NCBI GenBank assembly: GCA_964247055.1
Contig: OZ176060.1
Span: 1,426,001 to 1,490,000, forward strand
From: Paragordius varius
Taxonomy: Eukaryota > Animalia > Nematomorpha
DNA: 64,000 nt
Direction of reading: 5' to 3'
A program made the position numbers and the translations under genes. Position 1 is the first letter of the stretch; each line of letters begins with the position of its first letter. Below are positions 1 through 61,586 of this stretch, piece after piece. Below the pieces are notes generated by a model that saw only the letters and a list, made by a program, of their open reading frames with translations, was not told the DNA's origin and ran no database searches.

Positions 1-2287
1 CCTCATGCAGAAGTTTTCTCGAATTATATTTATATAGAATTGACCTATATCCAAAATCCATGGTTCACTCTGGATTTAAATGCGATTGCTGAAATCTCTG
101 GTGTTTATGTAGATGTGAAAAATCAATATAATTCATGGATTTTTTCAGACTATTTACATGTATTTGTGGGATATTCGGAGGATTATAATCAAAATTTTTT
201 ATGCACTAAAAGCCAGTATAAAAAAATCATATATTAAGATCCCAGTTATTTTTTAGCCAATGTCCTTTTTTAAAAGGCCAATATGTGACAATCGTATTAA
301 TGAGTTACCAAGGATCTGAAACTTTTTTTATCTGTTATTTTAATGTTTATGGGACGATCAAATATAATTATCAAAGTTGTCAAGTTTATAATGTATTAGA
401 CAATATTGCTTATAAAAAATTAGCTTATACCAGATTAAATTATGCGCATCATATAACTGATGGTATTTTAAATAACTGTTTGGGCACATATTCATCTAAT
501 ACATATATTATTGATTTAAATTATCCTCATCTAATATATGCAGCAAATTTAATTTTTAAGAACAGTATTATATTCTCTTACTTTAGAACAAAGTAGTGTA
601 GTGCATATTAGTGTGTCGATGGGTTGGTATACTCTGTCTGCGGCAAATATAATTTGTAATTTATTTACATCCAATCAACAATTATATAAAAACTGTACAA
701 AAGTTATTACTGGGAAATTTGTTACTATGGAATCCAAAACACAAGAAGAATTTTTGTTATGTGAAGCCGAAGTATATGGCAGAGAAATTGCAAGTGCGTA
801 CTTTCTATAATTAAGATGATATTTCAAGAGATATAGGGGATGCATCTCAGTCATACCGTAGCATTTCTGATCCAAATGTGGCTTTAGACGGAAACTATGG
901 CTACATCTATTCACTTTCATGGCTAACATGCACCTTCGTACCTTCAATTATTAAAGACCCATGGTGGATGGTTCATTTACGCTCTATTTATGTCATATCG
1001 GGGATAGAAATATACCGAAAATTGGATAATTGTGATAATGGTAGATCAAACATTAACACTTATAGATAAAAAAGTATACAATTTTCAAATTCGAGTTGGG
1101 TTCGACAAGGATTATTTAATGAATGATATATGCGCCGAATATAAAGGATATATGTATCAAACAAATAATACCATTGTGTTGAATTGTGTAAGCTCTAGTA
1201 TAGGTTTTATCTTTTGTTATTTCAGATATTTTACACAATGATTATTCAATGTATGGCGATACCGTTTCTATCAATATCATAACTGATGCCAAAGACATAA
1301 ATGCAAATTTAATTATTTGTGAGTTAGTGATAACGGGATTAGATATTGGATTTATGGAAAGTTATTACCTTAATAATTTTAGCATCTATCAAAAATATTG
1401 GATGTTTTAACGAAATACAAACTAATTCTCTCTATGATCCAAAATATAATTTAAGTTTATCCAAAGAAGATGATATATTAACAAACATCTTGGCTTTCAA
1501 AGTTGATTGCAACCGAAAATGCCGTACTCTTGGATTAGATTTTTCGGCAATATATGGTTAAATAATGTTTAAAAAATTTAGGCGGAATAAAATGTTTTTG
1601 CGTTAATGAATTAAATAATAAATTTTTAAAAATAAATGATAGGGAGTGTGATCTATGTGAAGAACATTATTTTTGTGGTTTAAATTCCATATTCATATCT
1701 GCAACTCAATTAAGTACATTTAAAACTAATTATTAGTTAATGTCGGTTATAATAAATGGGTGGAAACAGATTCTAAAGCTTTTGAAACAGCCTTAACCGA
1801 TGGGATCACTGATGTTTTTGCAACATACAGCTGTATTACCATAAAAAAATGGTCAAAATTAGAACTAGATTCCGTTTATTCCATTGTTGGCATGTATATA
1901 TTAACCACAATAAGTTATCTGTATTATAACACATAATAGATCAATCATTTGATTTAGAAATATTTTATGGATATGATCATTATGATATGAGAAAAAACAA
2001 ATTATGCATTTCTAATAATAATAACGTGATTATGAACTTAATAGAATGTGTATCAAAACCAGCTTCAATTATATACATAAATTATCTTTCACAGTCAAAT
2101 ATTTGTGAGATAATTCCATTATCAACTAAGAAGTTTGATGGATGTATGTATTTTTTAATTACTTCCATTAAGAAGTTTTACAGATATTTTACTTTTATGC
2201 AAAATGTTAATACAAATAATTATAAGTGTTACTTTTCACAGTGTCCTAAAATGACTGTAAATATCTGGGTAATTTATTTTTCAACTG
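1..2287 (+). CDS. Exon cluster 1: four F-type-lectin/discoidin-like domains, one WSC-like domain and a short Cys segment
   Basis: Exons 1-12, 38-215, 239-564, 587-793, 816-1040, 1066-1203, 1226-1360, 1383-1556, 1582-1713, 1737-1913, 1940-2287. Lectin motifs: QNPWFTLDL; DASQSYRS..NVALDGN..CTF..DPWWMVHLRSIYVISGIEIYR; LLCEAEVYG; LIICELVITG. WSC-like: IGCFNE...CNRKCRTLGLDFSAIYGGIKCFC...CDLCEEHYFCG. Confidence 0.88.
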
Positions 2288-5200
2288 GTTTATTATTCAT
2301 TTACCGTAAAAGCTTCCATAGAACCTAGATTTTTGATTAAGCTATAAATAAAATATAATTGGCGGAAATAGTTGTTGTAACTTATAGAAAAAACCGATTA
2401 TCCTCCGTTTTTTTAAAAATACATTTATTTTATTTTTTTTTCAAAATGGTTACAAGAGGGAAATTTTAAATTTTTAAAAATATTGTATAATTTCAATAAT
2501 AATCTATATAAATTAGATCATTTCATAGAATCTACTTAATATTTATAATTATATATTATCTGTGTCTGTTACGCGTCTTTGTGACTTAGTCTACATCATT
2601 AGTGAAATATATTTTTCGCAATAAACAGAAAAAAATAATATATCAAAGACTATAGTTTAGAGGGGTAGTTTTCATAGACTGTGTCACTAGTTATAGACGA
2701 ATTTAAAAAAGATCTTGACTCGAATTTTGGTCTTTATGGGAAATTTATCAAAATATTATCATATATTTATATAAATTTTTTCGAAAAGTTGTTATGAATC
2801 TAGGGTATTTTAGATAGGGTGAGACCTGCCCTTGATTAATTTCAAAAATGCTGTGCTATAATTTTTGCATTTGCATGGGGAATATTACACATTAGTCTAG
2901 GGCAAAACTGAAAAAAAAATACTTATTTTTATACGGTGGCGTATTCAACAATGGGATCACTGGCTGGGTCATAAGAAAAGCGGTCAGCCAATATTTTCTC
3001 TTTATACATGTAATATCTAAAACCATGATTAATGTATATAGTATAAGCAACAAAATTCTGTTAAACCATGTTAATATTTGTATTTTCCAAATAGTGAATC
3101 CTTAATCAACAGCCTATTAATAAAAGCGCTTGATCAATATTTGTGCTTTTATAAAGAGCTAAAACTCTTAATTTATATCCTCGTCTTAAGCATAACTACT
3201 TGGTAAATTATTCTTTAAGCGATATTTTTTTTTGCTAATGTCATTTTATGAAGAGATAGCTAACAGGGGCCAATTCAAAATATACTGCCCATTATGTTCG
3301 GCCGTTCTAGAGAAAAAATATTAAATTTCAGTAGGCATGGTTTTCCAAAATTATTCAATGATGTTATTCAACTCGTTTAAAAAACTTTGTTACAAGGGGT
3401 GGAGCGCAACTGACAGGCTAATTCCACCCGACTATTATCCGCCTTTTTATAAAGCATAAATATTTTACCCTTTTAAAAGGGCTCACATTTTTCAAATGTT
3501 TTAACATCTTATACATTTTTATGATATATAGAATTTTATAACATAACAGTTCATTATGGTTTTCTAATTTGATATTATTAAAATTTTAAATATTTAAGGT
3601 ATTAGCCAAATTGAAAAGCATGCTTTTAGCTTTTGCACTGCTTTTAATTCTTCCACTTTTTTTCTTTGTACATGCGCTATATTTATAAACATATTATGGT
3701 TAAAATATGTATTAACTTTGAAAATCCAAATCACATTTTACAGCATATTTTTGATATTATTAATATAATCAGATGTTTGTTTCGTGCTTTGGAACTAAAT
3801 CAAATTAATCTAAAAAACTGTAGATTAGAATAAAAGTGAAAACATCAACAAAATTTATATATTTGCTGATGTTTATTCTAAAACCTACTAAAGCCTAAAT
3901 ATAAGTCTATTTAATACAGGTAAAGATTGGAACTTAAAGATTAATAAAAACAACTATCAGAACAGTAGTTTTTTACAAGTTTAAGCTCTTTGTGTATATT
4001 AAGCAAAATGTAATTCCTTAAAAATAAGATAATTAAGTTTTAAACATTTACGTTTTTGGCAATCAGAATATGTTAAAAGGATTATGTATCATTTTTTTGG
4101 CAAAATTATATTTAGTATTTTCAGTGTTTTTAGAAGTAAACAAATTATTTAAAATAAACTGTTTATCGCATCTTCACCAAAAAAAGTATATTTTTAAATT
4201 TTTTATACTTGATTACACAAAGTAGTTTACTTCAGACTTCAGAGTTTAAATTTGTGTTTTCGTTAAAATTTTATTATTAGGCATTGAACTCCTTATTGCA
4301 TAAAAGATATATTTTTTACAGATAACATTCGACGTCCGAAATCGGGATAACAAATCGAAACAAACTGCTGATTGATATTTAATAAATATCAATTTTCTAA
4401 ATAACGATGTTACATTTGTCATCTCATTGTTTTATGTTGTATTATTTTTCAATGAGAAATTTTTTAATGATTAAATCTAAATATATAATGACGCATTTTT
4501 CAGAATAACTTAATTAAAAATTAAAAAATTGCAATGCAATAATACTAAATGTCTAATTTAACATTAATTAAAAGAACATGATGTTTAAAATTCATATCAG
4601 TAGCTGGAACTTTTGCAAAATAGATCAAAAAAGAAATATTAATACAAAAATGAAATGTATATATATAATTCTATTTGCTATTAAATGTAAAATGAGAATT
4701 CTTATTTACATTTTAAAATTCTATATCAAAATGTAGTTAATAATTTATGTTAATTTTATTTAAATTTTATATGTTTCGAATAAGTAAAATTTAGAAAGTT
4801 TAGTGATTATTGAATATTGTAAAGGTAATGAGGATAAATTTGTAAAGATGAATCCGTGAATAATGATATAAACGATAATTAAATTGAAAATGAAAATTAT
4901 ATTGCTTATTAGTTCAATTTTGATACTAAATTGTTAATAATACTTAGACTTAATGCGGCTATTGGCAACTCAGCAAGCTAAAAAGATATTTATAGTGACA
5001 AATTATTAATAATATTAATTTATTTAAGTAATTTAAATTTATTTACGACTTTTAGATAATATGGCATACAAGCAAACAGTAACTTGTTCGTCAGGGTCAA
5101 ATGATTGTAATAATTTAAACGATGGTGATTTTAAAAGTAGCACAAATATTAAACAAGCTATTACTATAATAATTCATTTGGACGAAATTAAACTTATCAA

Positions 5201-8200
5201 CTCAGTTGCAATGTATTATGAAACCAATAGCAGTTTAATTTATCACCATATTTTGTAGATACACAAATTCATATATTGGGATCAACTAAGCCACTAAATG
5301 TGGTTGATAAAAACATTACTTGTTTAAAGACAATTCTGCCAAAAGGAACAACCGAAATTGAGTTTTCATGTAATAAACAAATAACTGCAAAATATTTAAC
5401 CGTTTTTATTGAGACAATCAACTTAAAAATTTATGAGTTTTTAGGAATTGGATATAATCCAGAATCTTATAAAGACATCAAAGGTTTGTGTATTTTAAAT
5501 TAATTATTACAGAAATTTTACAATATATATTATCTATCCCGTTTTAGAAATAATCAATTATAATACATCTTATCTATATTTTAAAAAAATATTATACACA
5601 ATATGTCAAATTCAGATAATAATAAAATTATGGTGTTTGTGATCGTAACATTAGCTTTCATATAAAGTTACGATAGAACATTGAACGGTGGTCGGCAAAA
5701 ATATGATTAATAGATTAATTGATACCAAAAAGCTTCAGGATTAATATCAATGTGATAAATGCGGTTAACTACAAAGTTAAATTTTTTTTATTAGCGAATA
5801 TCAGAATATTGCATTTCGCATATTAGGTCAAATAGCTATTAACAACAGAGGAAAAGTAAACATATTTTATATGTTAAAATGTTCTATAAGGAATGTCCTA
5901 AAACAAAATATTATTATCGAAGATTTTTCAAACTTTTTTAAGACTCCGACATACAGAAATTAAAGGTAAAAATCGCACTTTGGCGTTAAGATCAAATCAA
6001 CTTGATATGCGGATTTCATATTTATTTCAACTATCATATTTACTATTATTTAGAGTTTTAATATAATGCGTTAAACAGATATAAATCTTTTATAATTTTT
6101 TTGATAATTTGCACCAAAGAGGAAGTAGCCTATTGATTTACAAAACAATCAATCAATATATATATATATATATAAGGAATAATTTTCCTATGCAGTTTGG
6201 AGGGAAAAATTTATCGACGCCTTTATTTATTTATGGTTTTATGCACAAATGATCAATAACCAAAATGTCACAAAAATATTCGATCACAATATACGGTTAA
6301 ACAAAATCCTTAAATCTGATATACTTAATGTTTGTTTCCGCATCAAATTGTATGATGAAAATATTTATATAATTTATTATATGTTTTGTAAAAACGTTAC
6401 TTTCGTGGTTCAATTTAAAAATATATTATTTTTATATAAGGCTTTAACTGTGATTATATATTAAATATAAGATTATTTAAATAAAAATTAAACCCACATA
6501 ACAATTAGTTTCTTCGATTCGTTGGAAGCTAAAGGGCGATTTTTTGACCTTAAGTACTTCAAGGAAGCTCCGAATATTTTTAAAATCATTAAAAATACTT
6601 GCTTTAGAATTATCCTTATGGAACATATTAATAAATTAATTTTAGTAATCTACCTCTAAATATTAGAAAAATAAATTAACTTTATAACGGCATTTATCAA
6701 TAATATTCATTATCCTTCTTTTAACTATATAAGATCGATAAATATTTATTTTTTGATTCTCATCTTAGCCATTTATTTCAATATTTTAAATAATTTTCAA
6801 ATTTTGTTTTTAAAGATTAAAGTTTCTATATTTAAATATAACTAAAAAATAAAAAAAAAGTGCATACATCATTTAATATTTCATTTAGTTTGTTCTCTAA
6901 AATGTAGGAAACGATTTCATTTAACGTTTTAAAAATATTATTTACACTTCGATTCAAATTGGGGTAGCCAAATACCCCAAACTAAATTTAAGTTAAGATT
7001 TTAAAAAAATTATTGAAAGAAAAGGTCCCAATTTAAATTTGTGCTTCTATCCTAATAAAAATTATATAATTGCCAAAATATCTAAATAAAATTTTGTTTT
7101 GAAAAAAAGTTCCATATACACTTCGACGCCATTTTTATTTTACGAAATTTTTGCCAAATATCCTTCAATTTTAAGGGTAAAAAAGCTATTTTTTTTAAAT
7201 TACATAGTAATAGAAAAAGCGGTTTATTTTGTATTATTTTTCAATTTTACGATGTGCAAAATTTTGCCATGGTTTTGATTTCTTTCATATCTTTTAAAGA
7301 TTTTAATTTTAAACAGGCGTGGGGTATTAAATACCCCAATTTGAATAGAAGGACTAAAATGAATGTGTTGTATCCAATGTTAATCTAATTTGATGGGATG
7401 TGTTTATTATTTTTTTACTATTTTGTTTATATTTGATTACATTGTTAATCTTTAATATTGCCAAATAGCATATACAGCTAAAGGCATTATTCTAAATAAA
7501 AAAGAGCATTTAAGACAAAAATATTACTTACTCTTTGCTGTATGTGATATAAAGAGGAATTATAATTAGAAATTGCATTGTATACTTATTATACCGTTCA
7601 TAGAGCGAAATTCAAAATTATAAAAGAAAAAATAATTACAAATCAAATTTAGTTTTTTCCTACCATGTTTTTAAACCTTCATATTTTTAACTTATCGTTT
7701 TGGATTGAAAATAGAGATAATTTTATATTCGCAAATTTAAATATTTAACGCTTAAGACTCTCCTTAAAAAGATTAATTGTAACTTCACTACAATATAATT
7801 TGTATGAATGTATTTTTTCACGGGCCTTCAAAGTCCTACTGCTACCTCCCCGCGGTGTTGGTCGGATCACCTTTGGTGAACGAACAGCAGAGGCCAGTTT
7901 TGGATGTTCTGCAAAAACATCTACTTCGCAAGGAGTTTTTTCACAAGAGCAGGCGAAAAGTAAATAATCTTGCCTCAACCTATACACTATGAACACATCT
8001 TATTCAAAAACTGCTAACAACGAAACGATAATAATAATTAATATTACATTTTTAATAACTTCCAGTCTTGAAAAACTAAACAAACATAAACCCTTATATT
8101 AAAGACCATCCAAAATTAACCACAGCAAACTACAAAATCAAACAATTAGGAACAAATACATCAACCAAGCATCCGATTCAAAATGGGATATCCTAAAAAC

Positions 8201-17200: not shown

Positions 17201-17235
17201 TTGAATTGAACTGAAAATTAATTTCTGTCTATTAA

Positions 17236-17289
<54 letters not shown>

Positions 17290-53200: not shown

Positions 53201-56200
53201 TCGGCTCCATCCATTAATACATGTAAAACATGGTTTTGAAATATTAAAAATATTATAATGGAAACCGCACAACTGCAAAGACATCAAGTGCAAGAGTTAT
53301 TAGATAAAGACCTAACTCATACGACAAAACATTCAATAGATGTCTAAGAGTAATGATGGTGACAAATCTACTCTGGATTCTACACTGTTTGAATGAACGT
53401 ACGTTAAATCAAAAATTGGAATGCAACTTGTAAAATCGTCATGAAAGGACATTTCATTAGCAAGATGGACAAGTAATGATAAGCAACTTTTGCTTAAGTC
53501 CTAGCGAGAACGTAGTTACCTTGCGGTCCATCAAGAGCATGGCCAAATTCTTTGGCGAAAAAAATATGCTCTGTGTCTGGCGGGACCAGATCATTGTATA
53601 TATTTTTTAGTTAAACTTTTATTCACATCAACAAATGAATACTTTAAACGAGCCTTATTGGAAAAACGACCAGAATTGGCCAGAAAACATGGCAAAATGC
53701 CCCACACTAAAACAAAGACCACGCTAAACTTCTGTGACCTTTGAATCAAAAGGGCACACCCAGAGCAGCAATAATTCCGACGTTGGTAATAGCTAATGCT
53801 CTTTCGCAAAAGACCAACAATTTTCTGGCATTGATTCATAACTAAGTGCGCTAAATACTTAGAGGGCGATATACAATAATAACACTAGACAAAATTTTTT
53901 TACTTTTTTAATAGCCATTCTTGTTTATCAATTTATTTCACTAAAGTAACTAAATAGTATATCTGAAAAAAATTGGTCTAACACCAAAAAATTATTAGGG
54001 TTTATCGATAATTTTTGGCCCGGAATTAACATTAAACACGGAAGTTTCAAGATTAAAAGTTTTAGTAGAGCCATGTATTTTTTATCATACGAAAGAGCGC
54101 GAAAAACTGTAACCTTCGAATGGTAGTATTGGTCATTCAAATCAATCTGATGTAAAGATATTTGGGTTATAATAAAATTTTCAACCCTTAAATAAGTTAA
54201 AAATTTTCACAGACAAATTAATTTTAAAATCATATAAATTATTTTAATATAAATAGGGTTAGATTAGTAAATTAAAATCTTTGAAAATTTGGTTTGCTTT
54301 TTCAATAAAAATTATTTATCAAAATTATTTTGGGTAATGGATATATAGTTATAATCGTAAACTTATTACTTAACCTTAAAAAAGTTAAAAATACCTTAAA
54401 CATTTTTAATTTGTGAAATTTGGAAGTTATAAGCCTTTTTAAAAAACATTACATATTGATAAAATGGTAATTTTGTAAAAACAAATAATTTAAAAATAGT
54501 TTTAAATGACATAGAAGCAATAAAGTGTATTAATCAAAAAATCTTGTGTTATCTTTTTTGGACATTCATTGCCATCTAGACAAAGTTTCATCCATTAGTT
54601 TTAAAAATATATTAATCTCTTGCTTCGCGCGTTTGTCTTCCTATGTCCATTATTAACTGTCGATGTAAAACACATTAGTATGCATTTTATAGAGTTTTCA
54701 CTATGTTAAATAATATATTATAAATGGGCATTTGTTGTATATTTTAAAAGAAAAACATTTTTCAGTAAAATTTTGATAAAGAGGGCGCATAATCATAAAA
54801 AATCAAATTAAATTCTTAAGTGGAATTATAATTTAGGTTTAATAAAAAAATGAGAGTAAATATCAAAATGGCAAAAAACTCGGGTGGCATAAAAGATGTG
54901 ATTACATATATTTGACGCCATTTTGTTGATACCGGCTTTCGGTAAACTGAGTAAAAAACTTTTATTGAATTGTATAGAAAAAGTATTTAAAAAAAATATA
55001 TATATATATATATAATTAATATATAGGTTTGGATATTTGGCAATATTATACACCACTTCCACTTTTGTGCAAATTATCTAATTTTATATTAGGCTTAAAT
55101 ATTTTTTTTCGCGACATATGGGTAAATGTTATATATATAATAATTATATGGTTATATAGTTTCAGCATGATTGGAAGTGTTTTTCGTGACGCCAAAGTGC
55201 GATTTTGCTTATATATGTATTTCCAAATCAATCCTAATAATTAAAATTTTGGGTTTAGGATTATGTTTGTCCATATATACATACAATATTTAAATGAACA
55301 GTTTTATTGTGTAAATGGTAATAACAACGGTGTCATTTTGAATCTTGCTTAATGCTAAAATTCATACTTTTTCAAATTATTAATCAGATCATGCTTTTTA
55401 ACATTTAACTTTTGCCCATCTTTGCCGCACATTTCATAATAATATAATTTATTATGAAAATTACTTTCCTACACATATTTACAGTATGCATTTTATTGTA
55501 TGTTAAATAATTTTATTGCCAGTTAAATAAAAGAAAACGTTTATCAAATACGTAAAATACTGCTCCACAAAATTATTTAGTACTGCACATATGAAATAGG
55601 ATCGTTAGAATTTACATAGGCTTAATTTGATGGATATTTTGGTATGTTAAATTTTGATGAGAATATTACAGCAATTTAGGTTAACATTTGAATTTATTAT
55701 TGATACGTATTTAGCGGAATTTTGTGGGTTATTATCTTTAATAAATTAATAATTAGTAAAATAGGTATTTAAAGATTGTTCATGTTAATTGTTCCCAACC
55801 AAATTCAATAATTATATTTTTTAACATGATAAATACCTGTATTTATCAAAATAGGTATTTTTATTATTTTATATAGTTATTACTAATTAAAAACACAGGT
55901 ATATATATATAGGTTTGTGAAATTTTATGTAGATTTTACATAATTTTTGCTTTTAGGTTTTGCTGGTTAATTAATTATAATTTTCAAATATTGACATATT
56001 AATAAATACATAAAAATATTTGGATTTAAGTAAATTCATGTAGATTTTATTTTGTTTTTTATGTTTTGCATTGTTAATTATATATAATTTTTAAGTATTT
56101 CGGACATTATAATAAATACAGGTAAAAATTGCAGTTTTTTATAAATTTAGTCGAATTTTAATTTTTTTTGTTTTTTTATTTAACATTGTTAATTGTATTT

Positions 56201-59200
56201 AATTACTACATATTTTGGACATTTAAATAAATACAGTTAAAAATTCCGGTTTTTAATAAATTTAGTATATTTTTAATCTTTGTTCTTGCTAATTGTTATT
56301 ACTATATATTGTTGATACATTAATATATACAGGTAAATTACTATGGTTTGCGGTTTTTATTTTTACCTGTATGCTTAGATGTTAATTATATCTAAAATAT
56401 TAGTTTTCAATGTAACAAAAAAAATAATTTATTTAAAAATTTAAAAAACCGCAAATCCCAGTAATTTTTACCTGATATATCAACAAAATATATAGTAAAT
56501 GATAAATTAGCAAGGTTGAGAAATGAATTAAAAAATTTTACTAATTTATTAAAAACCGCAACTGTATTTATAGGTCCAAAATATGTAGTTAATTTAAGTT
56601 AACAATGTTAAAAAAACCAAAAAATTAAAATTTTACTAAAATTATTAAAAACCGCAATTATCTTATTTATTAAAATGTCCAAAATATGCAGTAATTAATA
56701 TTTACGATGTTAAATAAAAAAACAAAAAAAACCAAGTTAATTTATTAAAACTCCAATTTTTACCTGTTTTTATTAAAATGTCCAAATATTTAATAATTAA
56801 TTACAATTAACAACGTTAAATAAAACAAAAAATTTAAAATTTGACTAAATTTATTAAACACCACAATATTTTATTTATTAAAATGTCCAAAATACTCAAA
56901 AATTTTATATAATTAACAATGCAAAACATAAAAAACTAAATAAAATCTACATAAATTTTCTTAAACCTATATAATTTTACCTGTGTTTTAAATTAATAAT
57001 CAAACTATATAAAATAATATAAATAACAATTTTGCATAATACAGGTATTTATCAATAAAAAATATTTATGATTAAATTTAATTAAGAATAATTAACACAA
57101 ATAATCTTAAAATACCTATTTGACTATTTATTAATTAATAAAGAAAACCCACTTCCGCATCTAAATACCTAACATATTTAATTGTTAACATAATTTGCTA
57201 TAATATGCAAAATTTAACATTACAAAATATCCATTAAATTAAGCCTGTTAATTCTCACGTTAATCCTATTTCATATGTGCAGTACTAAATAATTTTGTGG
57301 AGCAGTATTTTACGCATTTAAACCATTTTTTTATTTAATTGGCAATAAAATTATTTAACATACAATAAAATGCATAGATGCCATTAATCAGTTGGATAAA
57401 AATTGAATCTTTTATTTTATTCATATTTGCACAATTGATGTTAAATTATATTTTCACATAGATTTGCTCGCAAATGTGTTTACCAAATTTTGAAACGTGG
57501 AGTTGTGCTTGTTTCCCCGGTTTTTTTTTATCTGATGATAATACCACATGTTGTAGTTTGGAAACCGGTATTTGTGTTTGTAACGACTTAACAATCAAAT
57601 CATCAGATAAAAAAAATTGTTTTCCTGACGAATGTCAAAAGCATAATTGTTCTTATTCTTGTACCACTAGTATAATTGATGGGACCGCCTCCTGCTCATG
57701 TCCCGATCTCTTTAGATTAGATGTTGCAGATAATAAAACTTGTTTTGAGGTTGGTATTTTATAAATATTTAGGATCCGTGCTTATTGCGGAATGGAGGAT
57801 GTCAACAAATATGTTCTGTAGGTATTAAACATCTAATATTTAGACATGTTTCGGAACATTATATGCACCTGTTTTTCAGGCTTTCTTCTCAACACTGATA
57901 GGTAAATTCTAATTATGAATATCGCTTTTTATTTATTCACATAAATATTTTTATACACAAATATAAACTATTTTTATAACACTTCGATTCAAATTCCCAA
58001 CTGGCTAGCTCAGGCAAGCAAGCGACCCCAATATAAATTTGCTAAAATAAATATTGAACCACGCTAAAATGAGATAAATTTTTGTTTTAAAAGGTTTCAT
58101 ACCCTATCTTGTTGCATTTTTAATTAAATCTTTTCAAAAATGAACGACTAATATTTAAATTTTTCTTTTAGTTGAGCATGATTAAATATAAGGAAGTGGT
58201 AGCAATATTTTTTATATAAGCTCATTCATTCATTTTTCAATTTTGTCAGTTTAAAAAATTCATAACATAATTAATTAATTCTGAAAGCTTTAATTTATTA
58301 AATTTCATAAAATATTTGATTATTCATGCCACTGGTCCACCCCTATTTGGATTGAATGAGATAACATGACTTGTTTTCAAGTGTCAAATCACTATTAAAT
58401 AATAAACGTTTCTTTACCATTCAGTTGGTAAATCGCGAAATACGTGTGAACTCACAGAATGACAATTTAGATTATATGTAAAAATTGGTTTAGCTTTGTA
58501 ATGCACACAAGGGGCCCGCAACATTTTGGCCCATATCGAAATAGCGTGCCTTTGGGGCTAAATTTCAGAAAACCCATCAGGCCATATGAGTTTAATAGCT
58601 GCTTAAAGTATTACCCGTAACAAGGCAAAAATTTAAGTCGTGTGGTTTTTTTTAAATTAGCCGTTTATTAGGCCCTTCACGACCTGAAAAACGCGCCACC
58701 ATAGAATTTTTTAATTTTAAGGCAATTTTTCCAAAAACTATTGAGAGCATATAGAATCAATCATGATTCCAGGTAATAACTGTAAAATGGCAAATTTTTT
58801 TATCAGGCGCTTTTTTTGTATCAGCTTCTGGGTAGGGAGCTACCCGCCAAAAACTGCGCCACTATATAGAAATTACGTTGTTTTGGAACTAATTTAAAGA
58901 AAACCTATCAGGCGAGTTCAATAGGGGCTTAAAATATTACCCGTAACAAGGCAAAAATTTAGGCTGTGCGGTTTTTTAAAATTGCTATTATGTATGCTAT
59001 TTGGAAATAATGACTTTCTAGCAATGTATACTTATTCATACTGTGCTATCTAATATTTATAAAAATGGAAAGTGGTGGCTTTGTGATCTGTTTCCGGAAA
59101 ACCGGTAGACCCATTCTAATCCAAATGTCGAAAAAATATAATCATAAATGAATGCATACGAGTTCAATAAAGGCACCCATAAAAAGAAGTTATAGTATAG

Positions 59201-61586
59201 CAGTTTTATCCGTTAGCCATCGATTTGGGGCTTTACACCAATAACAATTTAGTATGAATGCACCGTTTAGATAATCCTAGGGGATCGTAGCTATTAAATA
59301 ATGTTTCAAAATAATTCACATATATGGATCATTTTAATCCCTTTTTTCGACAAGCCCCCCGAGATTTACGCTAGTAACGTATAAAAATGCATGTGAAATT
59401 GCAATCATTAAATTCAAAAATTTATGTTAAAATGCCTTCTATTTTATATTAACAGAATTGATATAAAGTGAATATCTGGTTTTAAATAAATTTAAATTTA
59501 CAGTTGGCATTTATGTGGGCCAATTCACATTGCCCAATTTTCAACACAGTAGCATATGGATAAAAAACAACAAATAATTAAAATTAGGGTTTGGACACAA
59601 CACATTTATTCAGTCCTTTTATTCGAATTGGGGTAATAAGTGATCCACCTGTTAAAAATTATTTTTTTAAAAAATGGGTTATTAAAAACATTGCAAAAGT
59701 TTGCACTATTAAATTGATGAACCAAAATTATAAGCAGAAAATACGTGGCTTTTACCTTGCCCAACAGATCCATCACCACCAAAAACAAATTGCTTCAGCC
59801 AGAGGACCATGCACTATTTCTGCGGGATCATAGTGGCATTGTGCATTATAAACTTTTGGGTTAAATTGTTATTACACAATTCACTGACATAAAAATTATT
59901 GCAGATCATACTTTAATCGAAAAACAACTAAAATCGTCTAAAAAGGATGGCAGTGATTTTGCTGCATGACAATGCTCGTTTCACACAGAAAAACTAGCGA
60001 AGGTTTAACTGCTCTATGGGTAATTCTCTCGCACTCGCTGAATTTCCCTGACCTAGCGACCCCCTTCTTATTGAACTTCTTATCAATGGGACCAAAAAAT
60101 ATATCGACTTAATTTAAACCGCAAAACTATATCCATATTAATTCTAGATGTTAGGCTTAAAAATCGAACATTCACTATAAAATATGCTAGTATACTTCAT
60201 TAACGCATAAACGAGATAATAAGAATTTTTCGGACATTGAAAAATAATCATTTAAAAACATATAATATTCTTTATAACTTAAATTTTGAAAAAAACTAAA
60301 GTTATTTATAATATTTTAAAGTAAAAGTATTGTTGGAGTATTATTAGAAGAACACTATAAATCAATCAAAAATTACGTGACCAACGCAAATGTAGTTACT
60401 CCATACCGACCCCGGTAATTACTTATTTTAGAGCAAAACTTTTTGAATAGGAAAATAGCTGTTGCCACAAACGGATAATCATTTTAACTGGTTGTTACAT
60501 TGTGTATTTCATCGAAAAGATTTTTCAAATAACCATTGAGTTTGAATGCGAGTGTTGGGATTTCATGGTTAAATAAGATTGGATCACATATATTGTAAGG
60601 TCGTTTGGTTAATGGTGGTTAATGATCGCAGTTGTGTTCAAATAAAGATTATATGGGGTCAAAAGGTATAGTTAAATTGATCATTAGATAGGTCACCAAC
60701 GTTTCAAGAAAATATACAACCGTGGTTTCATTCTAAAAACCACCTATTCCTAATTTTAAAATAAAATCACTCTGCTTCTATTTTTTAAATTTCAATTACT
60801 ACGGCCCTCGCCCAACTGTTGGAAATTATCCTGGTTCCGATTTATTTGTGACTGATTTAAAAAAGGCGATGCTTAAACTAAATTTTTTAATTTTAGGAAA
60901 AGTTGTTACATAGATCATTGTGTAGAGAATAAAAATGGCTGTGCTCACTTTTGTAAGACGGTTAATAACCAAGGTGTGTGCAATTGTGATACAACAAACA
61001 ATTGGTTTGTCGCAAAAGATGATTTAAAAAAATGCTGTAAAGCGTCTTCCACGGGATTAACTTGCGATTGTAATAATGAAACATCAATTCTATCATATGA
61101 TAAAAATAAATGTTGGCCCAATGTTTGCAAATATCCGACTGTAAATGGAGGGTGTCAACATATCTGTGAGATAGATATCAATAATGGTGATAAAATATGC
61201 AAATGTCGTTCCGGATTTATTTTAAATTTAGATACATATACATGTAGTTGCAAAAAGGGATTTACTGGCTATGATTGTAATATAGGTATATTTTTAAATT
61301 TTATATTTAGATAAAAACGAATGCCTCTCTGTGGCCGATAATAATTGTGATCCAATAAGAGCAGATTGTGTCAATACTTTCGGAGATTATTATTGCAAAT
61401 GTAAACCAGGATATAGAAAATTTGAAAAATTTTGTAAAGGTAGTTTAATATTTACTTATACAGACATTGACGAATGTGCTAAAATTACTTGTAAGCCATC
61501 TGAATATTGTCAGAATTATGAGGGGGGATACCGAGATTGCACTTGTGAAGCGGGATATTTCAAAAACGTAGGGAAATGTACAAGGG
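1..61586 (+). CDS. Giant multi-exon extracellular lectin/EGF protein (tandem F-type-lectin/discoidin-like domains + WSC-like + long EGF stalk + cbEGF); partial at both ends
   Basis: About 34 exons joined at GT-AG sites with matching phases give a continuous stop-free frame of about 2,736 codons. Each long-intron junction rebuilds a motif: YKDIK|ECGYC, GCI|ECYCP, CDT|GYMLS, SNK|KSCC, ENK|GVKCNC, ERN|GCTSLC, NPCK|INNGDC, ENN|GGCEYRC, ETK|ICSQMC, NTD|RKSC. The last donor, GTTAGT at 61587, is phase 1. Confidence 0.92.
5056..5483 (+). CDS. Exon cluster 2: fifth discoidin/F-lectin-like domain
   Basis: Exons 5056-5232 and 5259-5483 (26-nt intron). DNMAYKQTVTCSSG..NLNDGDF..IIIHLDEIKLINSVAM..C..FSCNKQITAKYLTV..LKIYEF. 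Confidence 0.85.
6945..7379. mobile_element. piggyBac-like MITE, copy 1
   Basis: Starts (T)TTA-CACTTCGATTCAAATTGGGGTA and ends TACCCCAATTTGAATAGAAGGACTAAAATGAATGTGTTGTATCCAATG-TTAA. Opposite orientation to the copy at 50783-51353. Confidence 0.65.
7850..10130 (+). pseudogene. Degenerate RTE-clade non-LTR retrotransposon (RT plus PHD-like Zn finger)
   Basis: Interrupted frames: KIPHDWNK..IYKNKGN; GLHQGSVLSPLLFIIILD..PPWELIFADDIV..GLKININKT; then C-x2-C..LWIHKQC..FKCNNC at about 9420-9570. Confidence 0.85.
11170..11659 (+). CDS. Exon: first EGF-like modules
   Basis: Phase-1 acceptor at 11169 and phase-2 donor at 11660. ECGYCSQKC..CIC, DPCELLACTYKC..CICPKNHRLLNGKC, NPCNDSTCMNSLC. Possible hidden 21-nt intron 11401-11421. 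Confidence 0.88.
12050..13620 (-). pseudogene. Degenerate non-LTR retrotransposon RT (clade uncertain)
   Basis: Minus-strand KAFDSI, a decayed QG..SP..F..ISDV block, and IIPTLLYGCESW downstream. Many stops and frameshifts. Confidence 0.75.
13651..14812. mobile_element. Non-autonomous DNA transposon with CACAGTGTAC termini and long imperfect inverted arms (family E)
   Basis: CACAGTGTAC at 13651 and GTACACTGTG ending at 14812, with about 250 bp of imperfect inverted arms inside. No TSD seen (ACTAG vs GAATG). Confidence 0.7.
15060..15400 (+). pseudogene. RTE-like LINE 3' fragment
   Basis: Decayed TYVGAENA and ENMLRMCKDG, resembling the TYGAETW / EMKMLRW block. Confidence 0.45.
15501..16380 (+). 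mobile_element. Non-autonomous Helitron-like element (family D)
   Basis: Reverse-complement match to 46484-47476. A|TC AT-rich start. A candidate 3' end, CAGGGCCAGCTAG|T, lies further on at 16740 and may belong to another element. Confidence 0.6.
17239..17286. repeat. (TA)24 microsatellite
   Basis: Direct reading. Confidence 0.97.
17482..18316 (+). CDS. Exon cluster: EGF-like modules
   Basis: Exons 17482-17960, 17989-18144, 18170-18316. DICFINNGKCSHIC..CLCPLGMQLSNDFITC; DLCNYPQRHICEHKC..CSCDTG. Confidence 0.85.
18900..20702 (-). pseudogene. Degenerate hAT (Buster/GTF2IRD2-like) transposase
   Basis: Minus-strand fragments: MTSNAKKRKL, NAVTCIC (BED-like), FTDS*LIKC, LSDSTCARRIEDMS, AIDSNTDISSTPQCALFVR, CTDGYPSIIG..FHCFI, HTSMRWL. 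Confidence 0.8.
20761..21860. mobile_element. CACTA/CMC-type MITE (family A), left TIR truncated
   Basis: Collinear with 27095-28218. Ends AAATTTGTTGTCCAGTG. Confidence 0.85.
23180..23720 (-). pseudogene. RTE LINE 3' end fragment with (AATG)-like tail
   Basis: Minus-strand AIRPVLTYGSELW, IRNLRLQWAGHVERR and GRP, followed by AATGAATGAAGGAATGAAT. Confidence 0.75.
23820..24500. repeat. Unclassified dispersed repeat (family F)
   Basis: Pieces recur at about 61720-61830 (inverted), 62100-62270 (direct) and 48740-48830 (inverted). Confidence 0.55.
24677..25427 (+). CDS. Exon: EGF-like modules
   Basis: 751-nt exon, phase 1 in and phase 2 out. DPCYINNGGCQHIC..CECHAGYSLDINGKSC; NPCLIENGGCPQDC. Confidence 0.92.
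26795..28895. mobile_element. Family E element interrupted by a nested CACTA MITE
   Basis: Arms homologous to 13651-14812. Right end ..GTACTATGTG at 28895. A decayed left-arm copy also lies at about 26250-26560. Confidence 0.7.
27095..28218. mobile_element. CACTA/CMC-type MITE (family A), intact
   Basis: 17-bp TIR CACTAGACAACAAATTT / AAATTTGTTGTCTAGTG with AAA on both flanks. The empty site is visible in the paralogous element at about 13975. Confidence 0.92.
31024..31692 (+). CDS. Exon cluster: EGF-like modules
   Basis: Exons 31024-31147, 31171-31353, 31377-31692 (two 23-nt introns). DVCQVDNGGCGQ|ICRV..; ECAIQNHPCSQIC..CSCINGFVLQNDNKSCC. Confidence 0.88.
33249..33866. mobile_element. MITE with inverted arms built of 21-bp palindromic subrepeats (family C)
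   Basis: The arms are reverse complements. Unit CCAACTTGAAGTGTTCAAGGA is repeated 4-5 times at 33749-33844 and contains the CTTGAA/TTCAAG stem. Confidence 0.8.
34021..34489 (+). CDS. Exon cluster: EGF-like/Cys-rich modules
   Basis: Exons 34021-34209 and 34233-34489 (23-nt intron). VKCNCDSGFNLHQDGRSCC. Confidence 0.88.
36675..38335 (+). CDS. Exon cluster: EGF-like modules
   Basis: Exons 36675-36992, 37112-37490, 37513-38145, 38171-38335 (introns of 119, 22 and 25 nt). Probable hidden 24-nt intron 37750-37773. Confidence 0.9.
38367..38621. mobile_element. hAT-Buster/Charlie-type MITE
   Basis: Ends CAGGGATCTAAC..GGGCCGCA and GCGGGTCGCCTGTTGGACACCCCTG. The 8-bp flanks GTCTAAAT / GGCTAAAC match 6/8 with a central TA. 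Starts 31 nt after the donor at 38336. Confidence 0.75.
39004..39500. mobile_element. Family C MITE copy, opposite orientation to 33249-33866
   Basis: Interior is the reverse complement of the 33249 copy; decayed 21-bp subrepeats. Confidence 0.7.
39510..39830 (-). pseudogene. RTE-like LINE 3' fragment
   Basis: Minus-strand ..ENRVGRPAIAYDNNINQDL. Confidence 0.4.
40312..41122. mobile_element. Family C MITE copy with nested insertions, including a piggyBac-like MITE end at about 40690-40833
   Basis: 21-bp subrepeats at 40330-40440. Insert ends TACCCCAATTTTAATCGAAGTA-TTAA. Family C sequence resumes to ..GGACCAACTTG at 41122. Confidence 0.65.
44104..44237 (+). CDS. Isolated 134-nt EGF exon
   Basis: GGCEYRCFLDLETGYKKCLCPENKILARNGLKCIIDPC. 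Phase-1 acceptor at 44103 and phase-0 donor at 44238. Not in the ORF track. Confidence 0.88.
44580..44980. repeat. Family G repeat, copy 1 (direct)
   Basis: Homologous to 47543-47830 (inverted) and 48355-48760 (direct). Confidence 0.8.
45039..46088. mobile_element. CACTA/CMC-type MITE (family A), intact
   Basis: CACTAGACAACAATTTT .. AAAATTTGTTGTCCAGTG with a 3-bp TSD ATA/ATA. Confidence 0.92.
46484..47476 (-). mobile_element. Non-autonomous Helitron-like element (family D) with both termini
   Basis: Minus strand: A|TCTACACATTTATAAAAAATGG .. CGGGCTGCGTAGCACGAGATTTACGCTAG|T, with a subterminal GC-rich stem and no TSD. Confidence 0.75.
47543..48620. repeat. Family G inverted repeat pair (about 280-bp arms, about 520-bp loop)
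   Basis: 47580-47830 is the near-perfect reverse complement of 48355-48600. Confidence 0.85.
49430..50330 (-). pseudogene. Degenerate Tc1/IS630-type DDE transposase containing 22-nt spliceosomal introns
   Basis: YLDESGF, GKNVSLLCMIG, CDNAPIH, LPPYSPQLNPIE. Introns at 49715-49736 and probably 50107-50128. Frameshift near 49950 and later disruptions. Confidence 0.85.
50527..50745. mobile_element. Partial piggyBac-like MITE, inverted relative to the adjacent full copy
   Basis: TTAA-CACTTCGATTTAAATT start; reverse complement of about 51110-51353. Confidence 0.65.
50783..51353. mobile_element. piggyBac-like MITE, intact, TTAA on both sides
   Basis: TTAA-CACTT-(25 nt)-CGATTCAAATTGGGGTA .. TACCCCAATTTGAATCG-AAGTG-TTAA. 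Confidence 0.8.
53130..53750 (+). pseudogene. Degenerate mariner transposase
   Basis: QVQELLDKDLTHT (cf. Mos1 ELQALLDEDDAQT), KNMLCVWRDQ (cf. K.MLCVWWDQ), LKRALLEKRPELARKHGK. Confidence 0.75.
53883..54890. mobile_element. CACTA/CMC-type MITE (family A), older copy with right TIR lost
   Basis: Starts CACTAGACAAAATTTT; collinear with the other copies but more diverged. Confidence 0.8.
55488..57374. mobile_element. 1.9-kb foldback-type palindrome with internal 110-120-bp tandem subrepeats
   Basis: Arms 55488-56358 and 56445-57374 are reverse complements around an approximately 85-bp spacer, with TA on both flanks. Related subrepeats occur at about 62890-63570. Confidence 0.85.
57462..57901 (+). 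CDS. Exon cluster: EGF-like modules
   Basis: Exons 57462-57749, 57773-57821, 57844-57901 (23- and 22-nt introns). DPCLLRNGGCQQICSV|DMFRNIICTCFSGF. Confidence 0.88.
58510..58990 (+). repeat. Family D (Helitron-like) internal fragment with an approximately 330-bp direct duplication
   Basis: GAAAACC(C/T)ATCAGGC..TATTACCCGTAACAAGGCAAAAATTT occurs at about 58570 and 58900. Confidence 0.65.
59049..59374 (+). mobile_element. Short Helitron-like derivative (family D) with both termini
   Basis: A|TCTAATATTTATAAAAATGG .. CGAGATTTACGCTAG|T; same terminal sequences as 46484-47476. Confidence 0.7.
59690..60080 (+). pseudogene. Degenerate mariner transposase (catalytic half)
   Basis: RDHSGIVHYKLL, VILLHDNAR, and SHSLNFPDLA (cf. 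HPPYSPDLAP). Confidence 0.75.
60897..61586 (+). CDS. Exon cluster: EGF and calcium-binding EGF modules
   Basis: Exons 60897-61285, 61311-61439, 61464-61586. DKNEC..CVNTFGDYYCKC and DIDEC..CQNYEGGYRDCTC match the cbEGF consensus D-x-D/N-E-C and C-x-N-x-x-G-x-Y/F-x-C. Confidence 0.9.

What the first reader, a model, noticed from the sequence alone, without database searches (positions are those of the whole stretch)
13..61586. Two-regime intron system: 22-28-nt mini-introns alongside 2-13-kb introns in one gene
Seen: 20 introns are required to keep the frame, with lengths 22 (x6), 23 (x6), 25 (x5), 26 (x2) and 28 (x1). Four more (21, 24, 24 and 25 nt) restore motifs. One intron is 119 nt and ten are 2185-13224 nt, with nothing in between. 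Mini-introns have only GT..AG and an AT-rich interior, with no room for a normal branch point plus polypyrimidine tract. Established: 20-30-nt introns are known in Paramecium and dicyemids. Inference: one spliceosome here handles both minimal introns and kb-scale introns, so the long ones may be mini-introns inflated by transposon pile-up and need a separate recognition route.
Basis: partly seen in the sequence, partly recalled or inferred. Interest (0 to 1): 0.75.

Follow-up and report, generated by a model that had tools for sequence, protein, structure and literature searches.

The report
Tiny and giant introns, one gene
A horsehair-worm gene for a large EGF-repeat protein is cut by 23 introns of only 22-29 bases and by ten of 2-13 kb; introns this short are published for only two other animal groups, but the "nothing in between" gap belongs to this gene, not to the genome.

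Summary
Removing them opens 2,718 codons ending at TAG 61589.

The best-matching proteins are "fibrillin-1-like" models from the hairworm Gordionus. They align collinearly (34-38% identity) across 8 long introns, the 119-nt intron and 13 mini-introns. That part is therefore one gene. The lectin/WSC front end is joined only by matching intron phase.

The organism is a nematomorph: its PSMB6 is 76% identical to Gordionus and at most 57% to anything else. It is not a dicyemid or myxozoan, the only animals published with introns under 30 nt.

Interspersed repeats fill much of several long introns. Mini and long introns share the same weak signals, and U2 snRNA and SF1 are canonical, so nothing points to a separate recognition route. 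In 84 inferred introns of conserved genes, 4 are about 25-32 nt, one about 52 nt, and the rest run from 67 nt to 3.3 kb.

No RNA evidence could be reached. The scan has already noted this mini-intron class many times elsewhere in this genome.

The parts
1..2287 (+). Exon cluster A: galactose-binding-like (F5/8C-like) lectin modules with a WSC-like insert. It holds 11 exons and 10 mini-introns. The gene continues upstream of the window.
   Evidence: The frame is open after the minis are removed. There is a weak F5_F8_type_C hit. An upstream exon hits WSC at E=5.6e-11.
13..37 (+). Mini-intron, 25 nt, phase 1
   Evidence: GT..AG; joins the upstream exon to 38-215 in frame.
216..238 (+). Mini-intron, 23 nt, phase 2
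565..586 (+). Mini-intron, 22 nt, phase 1
794..815 (+). Mini-intron, 22 nt, phase 1
1041..1065 (+). Mini-intron, 25 nt, phase 1
1198..1225 (+). Mini-intron, 28 nt, phase 1
1361..1382 (+). Mini-intron, 22 nt, phase 1
1557..1581 (+). Mini-intron, 25 nt, phase 1 (inside the WSC-like part)
1714..1736 (+). Mini-intron, 23 nt, phase 1
1914..1939 (+). Mini-intron, 26 nt, phase 1
2288..5079 (+). Long intron, 2,792 nt, phase 1. No support from the related protein; an acceptor at 5055 is also possible.
   Evidence: Only phase-1 sites fit both sides. The DNA is almost unique in the genome.
5080..5483 (+). Exon cluster B: one further lectin-like module
5205..5233 (+). Mini-intron, 29 nt (or 26 nt, 5205-5230), phase 0. 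Atypical, with 34% GC.
5484..11169 (+). Long intron, 5,686 nt, phase 1. Links the lectin part to the EGF part. No support from the related protein. Contains a reverse-transcriptase fragment at 9119-9529.
   Evidence: Phase match at both ends. RVT_1 E=3.6e-13.
11170..11659 (+). Exon cluster C: first EGF-like modules
   Evidence: Aligns to Gordionus P0336 from residue 215.
11660..17481 (+). Long intron, 5,822 nt, phase 2; splits an EGF module just before its CxC motif
17482..18316 (+). Exon cluster D (3 exons, 2 minis)
   Evidence: FXa_inhibition E=8e-10; Gordionus alignment.
17961..17988 (+). Mini-intron, 28 nt, phase 1
18145..18169 (+). Mini-intron, 25 nt, phase 1, in the Gly codon of CxCxxG[Y]
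   Evidence: Same module position and phase as the long intron that starts at 18317.
18317..24676 (+). Long intron, 6,360 nt, phase 1, in the Gly codon of CxCxxG[Y]. Holds a 1.1-kb repeat at 20763-21860.
   Evidence: The EGF module and the Gordionus alignment run straight across it. Repeat.
24677..25427 (+). Exon E, 751 nt, the largest exon
   Evidence: FXa_inhibition and cEGF hits. 36.5% identity to P0336 over 260 columns.
25428..31023 (+). Long intron, 5,596 nt, phase 2. Holds a 1.1-kb repeat at 27093-28218.
31024..31692 (+). Exon cluster G (3 exons, 2 minis)
31148..31170 (+). Mini-intron, 23 nt, phase 0
31354..31376 (+). Mini-intron, 23 nt, phase 0
31693..34020 (+). Long intron, 2,328 nt, phase 1, in the conserved Gly before the CxC motif
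34021..34489 (+). Exon cluster H (2 exons, 1 mini)
34210..34232 (+). Mini-intron, 23 nt, phase 1
34490..36674 (+). Long intron, 2,185 nt, phase 0
   Evidence: Only about 16% is an old repeat.
36675..36992 (+). Exon (EGF modules)
   Evidence: 43% identity to P0336 residues 1152-1255.
36993..37111 (+). The single middle-sized intron, 119 nt, phase 0
   Evidence: P0336 residue 1255 is reached on both sides of it.
37112..38335 (+). Exon cluster I (4 exons, 3 minis)
37491..37512 (+). Mini-intron, 22 nt, phase 1, in the conserved Gly before the CxC motif
   Evidence: The Gordionus alignment (GIPKCLCP) runs straight across it.
37750..37773 (+). In-frame mini-intron, 24 nt, phase 1
   Evidence: Matches an 8-residue gap in both Gordionus proteins.
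38146..38170 (+). Mini-intron, 25 nt, phase 1
   Evidence: P0336 residues 1576 and 1578 flank it.
38336..44103 (+). Long intron, 5,768 nt, phase 1, inside the NNGGC motif
44104..44237 (+). Exon J, 134 nt, alone between introns of 5.8 and 13.2 kb
44238..57461 (+). Longest intron, 13,224 nt, phase 0. At least 57% is repeats, including 1.1-kb copies at 45038-46092 and 53881-54900.
57462..57901 (+). Exon cluster L (3 exons, 2 minis)
57750..57772 (+). Mini-intron, 23 nt, phase 0, at an EGF module boundary
57822..57843 (+). Mini-intron, 22 nt, phase 1
   Evidence: Restores an EGF module that aligns with Gordionus.
57902..60896 (+). Long intron, 2,995 nt, phase 2
60897..61591 (+). Exon cluster M (3 exons, 2 minis), ending in the stop codon TAG at 61589-61591
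   Evidence: 54% and 46% identity to P0246, whose alignment ends 3 residues before that protein's own end. EGF_CA x2.
61286..61310 (+). Mini-intron, 25 nt, phase 1, at the usual calcium-binding EGF domain boundary
   Evidence: P0246 residue 1107 is reached on both sides of it.
61440..61463 (+). In-frame mini-intron, 24 nt, phase 1, between two EGF_CA domains
   Evidence: Matches an 8-residue gap in P0246. Each flanking exon is one EGF_CA domain.

Best explanation
The window holds most of one large gene of a horsehair worm (Nematomorpha). It encodes a secreted-type protein with lectin-like and WSC modules followed by about 45 EGF-like modules. The closest relative found is the Gordionus protein that RefSeq names 'fibrillin-1-like'.

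The primary transcript carries ordinary U2-type GT-AG introns of two size classes:
- Twenty-three micro-introns of 22-29 nt. They are T-rich and G-poor, with a GTW donor, an A-rich patch 6-8 nt before the end that is probably the branch site, then about three T and AG.
- Eleven conventional introns. Ten of these are unusually long (2.2-13.2 kb), largely because interspersed repeats have inserted into them.

Shown: the segments exist with these properties. Removing them gives one open frame. That frame is collinear with the Gordionus protein from exon cluster C to the stop codon.

Inferred: one canonical spliceosome removes both classes. The tiny ones would be paired across the intron, and the long ones across exons or across already-spliced exon clusters.

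The pattern reflects a genome-wide property: a micro class plus a broad ordinary class starting at about 52-67 nt. The absence of middle-sized introns here is a feature of this repeat-laden gene.
For: Gene model
- The frame is open for 2,718 codons after the introns are removed.
- The longest control chains are 239 codons or fewer, against 705 on the + strand.
- 21 of 23 mini-introns have lengths that are not multiples of three (p=0.007).

One gene
- Exon-by-exon tblastn places P0336 and P0246 in collinear order across the exon clusters.
- A local alignment gives single HSPs of 977 and 885 bits at 34% and 38% identity.
- Every crossed junction is continuous in that alignment. 8-residue gaps fall exactly at the two 24-nt introns.
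- The last two exons are each one EGF_CA domain.

Splice signals and machinery
- Signals are tabulated.
- U2 snRNA scores 177.7 bits and keeps its GUAGUA box.
- An SF1-HH domain scores 74.9 bits.

Other evidence
- A 22-nt intron sits in the 14-3-3 epsilon gene at L005:1494-1515.
- Repeats in the long introns.
- Organism: PSMB6 is 76% identical to Gordionus and at most 57% to anything else.
- Genome sample of 84 inferred introns.
Against: - No RNA evidence was available.
- The two long introns that join the lectin/WSC part to the EGF part (2288-5079 and 5484-11169) rest only on matching phase. Exon cluster B could instead end at the in-frame TAA at 5501-5503.
- The Gordionus models are computer predictions. 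P0336 starts in a transposon integrase fragment.
- The branch-site reading comes from 23 introns and modest p-values of about 0.005 per position, not corrected for the roughly 14 positions examined.
- The genome sample uses approximate gap lengths taken from profile hits.
Confidence: 0.8

Rival explanations
1. The window holds two neighbouring genes. A lectin/WSC gene would end at the TAA at 5501-5503. A separate EGF-repeat gene would have its first exon hidden somewhere in 5504-11169. The two-size intron pattern would still hold within each gene.
For: - The Gordionus models cover only exon clusters C to M.
- Exon cluster B runs into an in-frame stop 6 codons past the proposed donor.
- No outside evidence links cluster B to cluster C.
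Against: - Cluster C starts at an acceptor, in phase 1, with no ATG in its open stretch.
- Cluster B offers a phase-1 GT donor, and the join reads as a normal EGF start.
- P0336 is clearly cut short at its 5' end by a transposon fragment, so its silence about the lectin part means little.
Confidence: 0.25
2. One reading: mini and kb-scale introns need different recognition routes, for example a dedicated factor for the tiny ones. The long introns would be former mini-introns blown up by transposons.
For: - There are two discrete size classes. In 84 sampled introns only one falls between about 33 and 66 nt, at an estimated 52 nt.
- The same EGF module position and phase holds a 25-nt intron (18145) in one repeat and a 6.4-kb intron (18317) in the next. 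A near-equivalent pair is 37491 (mini) and 31693 (long).
- Repeats fill much of several long introns.
Against: - Donor and acceptor motifs do not differ between the classes.
- U2 and SF1 look canonical.
- Two long introns have little recognisable repeat.
- The known difference between pairing splice sites across introns and across exons already explains one spliceosome handling both (established knowledge).
- For myxozoans, the published comparison found no extra features in longer introns (PMC13644364).
Confidence: 0.15
3. The 22-29-nt segments are not removed. The locus would be a frameshifted pseudogene, or the interruptions would be assembly errors.
For: No RNA was examined.
Against: - All 23 segments start with GT and end with AG. 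They fall in a 22-29-nt band, are G-poor (4.7%) and share position-specific A and T signals.
- Outside the segments, 8.2 kb of coding sequence has no stop codon.
- Cysteine spacing and the Gordionus alignment are kept across them.
- The same class interrupts the conserved 14-3-3 epsilon gene.
Confidence: 0.02
4. The segments are removed from the DNA, like ciliate internal eliminated sequences, rather than from the RNA.
For: None beyond their small size.
Against: - The ends are GT..AG, not TA..TA.
- The organism is an animal with the standard genetic code.
- Phases and positions match classic EGF intron sites.
Confidence: 0.02

Closest known systems
Ultra-short introns of myxobolid Myxozoa (Henneguya, Thelohanellus, Myxobolus; Mol Biol Evol 2026, PMC13644364)
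   Same: GT-AG introns with medians of 22-27 nt. The donor is reduced to 'GTa'. A few weakly conserved A residues lie upstream of the AG. U2 snRNA is canonical, and longer introns occur in the same genomes.
   Different: Those are fast-evolving parasitic cnidarians in which short introns are the majority. Here the host is an ecdysozoan worm. In my sample of conserved genes most introns are 67-1,900 nt and only about 5% are tiny. That paper reports introns under 30 nt only for myxobolids and Dicyema among 51 animal genomes. Its main text does not mention nematomorphs.
Dicyemid (Dicyema japonicum) short introns
   Same: An animal lineage with introns of about 26 nt and reduced splice signals (as summarised in PMC13644364).
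   Different: A different phylum. Dicyemid genomes are compact. This genome combines micro-introns with kb-scale, repeat-filled introns in the same gene.
Ciliate 15-30-nt introns (Paramecium, Stentor)
   Same: Minimal GT..AG introns in a narrow length band, mostly not multiples of three.
   Different: These are protists, many with altered stop codons. Here the standard code applies and the gene is animal-type (EGF, WSC).
Pairing of splice sites across introns versus across exons (established model)
   Same: It explains how one spliceosome can pair sites across very short introns and also across exons flanked by long introns.
   Different: The exon clusters between long introns reach 1.2-2.3 kb before their minis are removed, well above the usual limit for exon-based pairing. 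An order of removal (minis first) would be needed. This is inference and was not tested.
Gordionus sp. m RMFG-2023 'fibrillin-1-like' protein (XP_065314783.1 and CAK9291516-18)
   Same: Collinear with exon clusters C to M at 34-38% identity. Both have FXa_inhibition, cEGF and EGF_CA modules, and the alignment reaches within three residues of the relative's C-terminus.
   Different: No TB domain was found in either protein, so neither is a true fibrillin. The Gordionus model lacks the lectin/WSC part and starts in a transposon fragment. Its intron structure could not be fetched.

Membership tests
U2-type GT-AG spliceosomal introns | GT at the 5' end and AG at the 3' end | tested here: met
   All 34 introns.
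U2-type GT-AG spliceosomal introns | Removal restores a continuous, conserved coding sequence | tested here: met
   2,718 open codons, with a collinear alignment to the Gordionus proteins.
U2-type GT-AG spliceosomal introns | Branch-point adenosine upstream of a pyrimidine run | tested here: inconclusive
   A in 15 of 23 introns at -8, and T in 18 of 23 at -5. No lariat data.
U2-type GT-AG spliceosomal introns | Machinery present: U2 snRNA with the GUAGUA box, and SF1 | tested here: met
   U2 at 177.7 bits with an intact box. SF1-HH at 74.9 bits.
U2-type GT-AG spliceosomal introns | Absence from the mature mRNA | not testable with these tools
Animal ultra-short (<30 nt) intron class (as in PMC13644364) | Length below 30 nt, forming a discrete peak | tested here: met
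   23 introns of 22-29 nt in this gene. In the genome sample, four fall at about 25-32 nt and the next are about 52 and 67 nt.
Animal ultra-short (<30 nt) intron class (as in PMC13644364) | Reduced donor ('GTa') and a minimal acceptor | tested here: met
   Position +3 is A in 13 and T in 9 of 23. There is no GTAAGT consensus.
Animal ultra-short (<30 nt) intron class (as in PMC13644364) | Sits at intron positions conserved in other animals | tested here: inconclusive
   Two minis lie at the classic phase-1 boundary between calcium-binding EGF domains. A direct comparison with a relative's gene structure was not possible.
Fibrillin family | TB (TGF-beta-binding, 8-Cys) domains among calcium-binding EGF repeats | tested here: not met
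   Pfam scans of the window exons and of P0336 and P0246 gave only EGF-type families. 'Fibrillin-1-like' is an automatic name.
Multi-EGF extracellular proteins | Tandem six-cysteine EGF modules | tested here: met
   269 Cys and 46 CxC motifs in residues 807-2718. FXa_inhibition, cEGF and EGF_CA hits.

The most novel reading that the evidence does not exclude
Hairworms would be a third, independent animal lineage with introns under 30 nt, and the first that is neither a dicyemid nor a myxozoan. Their introns would fall into two truly separate regimes, with a forbidden zone at roughly 30-55 nt. The micro class would be handled by a modified early recognition step and removed first. That would turn multi-exon clusters into large 'super-exons', which are then paired across kb-scale introns. 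Single intron positions could switch between the two regimes, as at the paired sites 18145 and 18317.
Probability: 0.2. Interest if true: 0.85.

Novelty: new member of a known kind. Interest (0 to 1): 0.6.

Why it matters
The library I searched holds reports of introns under 30 nt for only two animal groups, and a September 2026 paper states this explicitly. A nematomorph with such introns would be a third origin, in an animal that also keeps many ordinary and very long introns. That offers a natural within-genome, even within-gene, contrast for asking how short an intron a spliceosome can handle and how site pairing is chosen.

It also matters in practice. Gene finders with minimum intron lengths of about 30-40 nt would frameshift through such genes. 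This could distort gene counts and apparent gene losses reported for this phylum. I did not test this.

Tried and rejected
- Ciliate origin or genetic code: rejected. The coding stretches are free of TAA and TAG under the standard code.
- LRP-type receptor: rejected. No Ldl_recept_b hit falls in the window.
- Myxozoan or dicyemid origin (suggested by PMC13644364): rejected by the PSMB6 best hit to Gordionus. The 14-3-3 search was uninformative, at 70-78% identity to everything.
- Word search with the largest exon: no hits.
- Library-wide phmmer search with the same exon: only EGF-level hits. One of these clusters turned out to hold the Gordionus proteins.
- The 3,402-aa Logan protein P0258: not a relative of this gene. 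All exons hit the same EGF stretch of it.
- Paralogues in the same genome: none found for two exons.
- Pfam on 20 ORFs inside introns: nothing. The only transposon domain found inside an intron is the RT fragment at 9119-9529.
- Terminal inverted repeats on the 1.1-kb element: none convincing.
No Gordionus gene structure or RNA contigs could be read.
- The joined (spliced) protein was not sent to any database or folding tool. Database searches were done exon by exon, by reference. The joined model was used only inside scripts, for pairwise alignment with two proteins the tools had returned. The exon-by-exon tblastn gives the same collinear order.
Full report
**Organism and setting**

The window is 26% GC. 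It is C11:1426001-1490000 of a 110.6-Mb assembly in 44 contigs. Long stop-free stretches occur under the standard genetic code on the + strand.

A single-exon proteasome beta-1 (PSMB6) gene of the same genome is 76% identical (368 bits) to Gordionus sp. m RMFG-2023. Its identity to every other hit is 57% or less. The genome is therefore a nematomorph (horsehair worm), related to Gordionus but not close to it. This rules out the two animal groups published with introns under 30 nt, dicyemids and myxobolid myxozoans (PMC13644364). A 14-3-3 search was too conserved to help.

**Checking the observation**

A simple dynamic-programming gene finder, followed by hand curation, gave 34 GT..AG introns:
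- 23 of 22-29 nt (22 x5, 23 x6, 24 x2, 25 x6, 26, 28 x2, 29);
- one of 119 nt;
- ten of 2,185-13,224 nt.

With the introns removed, the frame is open for 2,718 codons and ends at TAG 61589. The gene also continues at least 9.7 kb upstream of the window, with more lectin-like exons and a WSC exon (WSC E=5.6e-11).

As a control, I allowed only mini-intron removal. The + strand then gives a 705-codon chain. The minus strand and eight shuffles reach at most 239 codons.

Both 24-nt in-frame introns are confirmed. The 21-nt and 25-nt extras were not found.

**Is it one gene?**

The word search with the largest exon found nothing. The library-wide phmmer search found only EGF-level matches. One of those clusters holds four Gordionus models, including XP_065314783.1 'fibrillin-1-like'.

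Exon-by-exon tblastn places these proteins in collinear order on exon clusters D, E, G, H, I, L and M. In P0246 the alignment ends 3 residues before that protein's own end, at the window's stop codon.

Inside a script only, the joined model aligns in single HSPs:
- residues 916-2512 to P0336 215-1816 (34% identity, 977 bits);
- residues 1542-2734 to P0246 1-1192 (38% identity, 885 bits).

The alignment is continuous across eight long introns, the 119-nt intron and 13 mini-introns (11 frame-shifting ones plus the two 24-nt in-frame ones). EGF modules are split by several of the long introns, for example CSCDT|G|YMLSVDGISC across 6.4 kb.

The two long introns that join the lectin/WSC part to the EGF part (2288-5079 and 5484-11169) have only matching phase in their favour. 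The Gordionus model starts in an integrase fragment and is cut short there.

The joined protein was not submitted to any database or folding tool.

**The mini-introns**

- The interior is 49.5% T and only 4.7% G. Long introns have 13% G and exons 17%.
- The donor is GTA or GTT with no extended consensus.
- A peaks at -8 to -6 (15 of 23 at -8). T dominates -5 to -3 (18 of 23 at -5).
- Eighteen of 23 are phase 1.
- The last two sit at the classic phase-1 boundary between calcium-binding EGF domains, and each flanking exon is one EGF_CA domain.

The same class interrupts conserved genes elsewhere. I verified a 22-nt intron in the 14-3-3 epsilon gene at L005:1494-1515.

This layout matches what PMC13644364 describes for myxobolids and Dicyema. 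The statement that they have 'only GT..AG' is therefore slightly too strong.

**The long introns**

- A 1.1-kb element occurs four times in three introns, all in the same orientation.
- At least 39 copies of it elsewhere in the genome are 89-95% identical. The first look gave 7,796 candidates, of which only 39 were scored.
- Repeats shared within the window alone cover 19-57% of seven long introns and 0% of the exons.
- A reverse-transcriptase fragment lies at 9119-9529.
- Intron 34490-36674 is only about 16% old repeat, and 2288-5079 is nearly unique.

Repeat insertion therefore explains much of the length, but not all of it that can be recognised.

The non-mini introns of this gene have a median of 5.6 kb. 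Those in a sample of conserved genes have a median of 435 nt (Mann-Whitney p=1e-5).

**Genome context**

I paired consecutive profile hits for the HSP70, 14-3-3, proteasome, CCT and myosin families. This gave 84 inferred introns:
- four at about 25-32 nt;
- one at about 52 nt;
- twelve at 67-89 nt;
- 64 at 101-1,600 nt;
- three between 1.6 and 3.3 kb, and none longer.

These lengths are approximate. A trough between about 30 and 55 nt does seem real. Earlier notes of this scan report the same (23-32 nt, or more than about 55 nt).

**Mechanism**

Mini and long introns share donor and acceptor motifs. U2 snRNA genes score up to 177.7 bits and keep the GUAGUA branch-site box. An SF1 helix-hairpin domain is present.

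Nothing therefore points to a second recognition route. The established contrast between pairing splice sites across introns and across exons is sufficient, although exon clusters of 1.2-2.3 kb suggest the minis go first. That last point is inference.

One observation favours movement between the size classes. The 25-nt intron at 18145 and the 6.4-kb intron at 18317 lie in the same Gly codon, in the same phase, in successive EGF repeats. The pair 37491 (mini) and 31693 (long) is nearly equivalent.

**Novelty**

The papers I could search hold no report of such introns in nematomorphs. The Gordionus genome paper does not mention introns at all.

This is a new lineage for a known kind of intron. 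The scan has already flagged it many times in other windows of this genome.

RNA proof is still missing.

Noticed in passing
window 20763-21860, 27093-28218, 45038-46092, 53881-54900: An unclassified interspersed repeat of about 1.1 kb. It occurs four times in this gene's introns, always in the same orientation. At least 39 copies elsewhere in the genome are 89-95% identical (7,796 first-look candidates). No convincing terminal inverted repeats and no Pfam domain were found.
   Followed up: partly
window 12589-13356, minus strand: Allowing two mini-intron-like removals gives a 239-codon open chain on the minus strand, inside a long intron. It includes the 157-aa ORF at 12704-13174. It has no Pfam hit. 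It may be a transposon gene that carries host-type mini-introns, or chance.
   Followed up: no
window 9119-9529: A reverse-transcriptase (RVT_1, E=3.6e-13) fragment on the + strand, inside the intron 5484-11169.
   Followed up: partly
window 55485-57376: A large inverted and tandem repeat structure near the 3' end of the 13.2-kb intron. It includes tandem arrays of 115-nt and 106-nt units at 56044-56966, and arms at 55485-56281 and 56620-57376 that are 79% identical.
   Followed up: no
L016 (G000:C11:1416001-1426000), upstream of the window: The gene continues at least 9.7 kb upstream. There are further lectin-like exons, a WSC exon (L016:6456-6755) and more kb-scale introns. Its 5' end was not found.
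   Followed up: partly
Gordionus protein P0336 (XP_065314783.1), residues 1-210: This RefSeq model of the related protein begins with an integrase (rve) fragment. The public annotation is therefore a chimera with a transposon and is cut short at its 5' end.
   Followed up: partly
G000:C3:257000-530000 and other contig ends: Dozens of full-length and partial U2 snRNA matches cluster in a few regions: C3 0.26-0.53 Mb, C2 11.95-11.99 Mb, C5 12.73-12.79 Mb, and the first 7-13 kb of C4, C6 and C8. Many score low, which suggests arrays of decaying copies.
   Followed up: no
G000:C1:14860511-14865843 (CCT subunit gene): Mini-introns are very unevenly spread among genes. Seven consecutive introns of this chaperonin gene are all about 390-700 nt (estimated from profile-hit gaps) with no mini, whereas 23 of 34 are minis in the window's gene.
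   Followed up: partly
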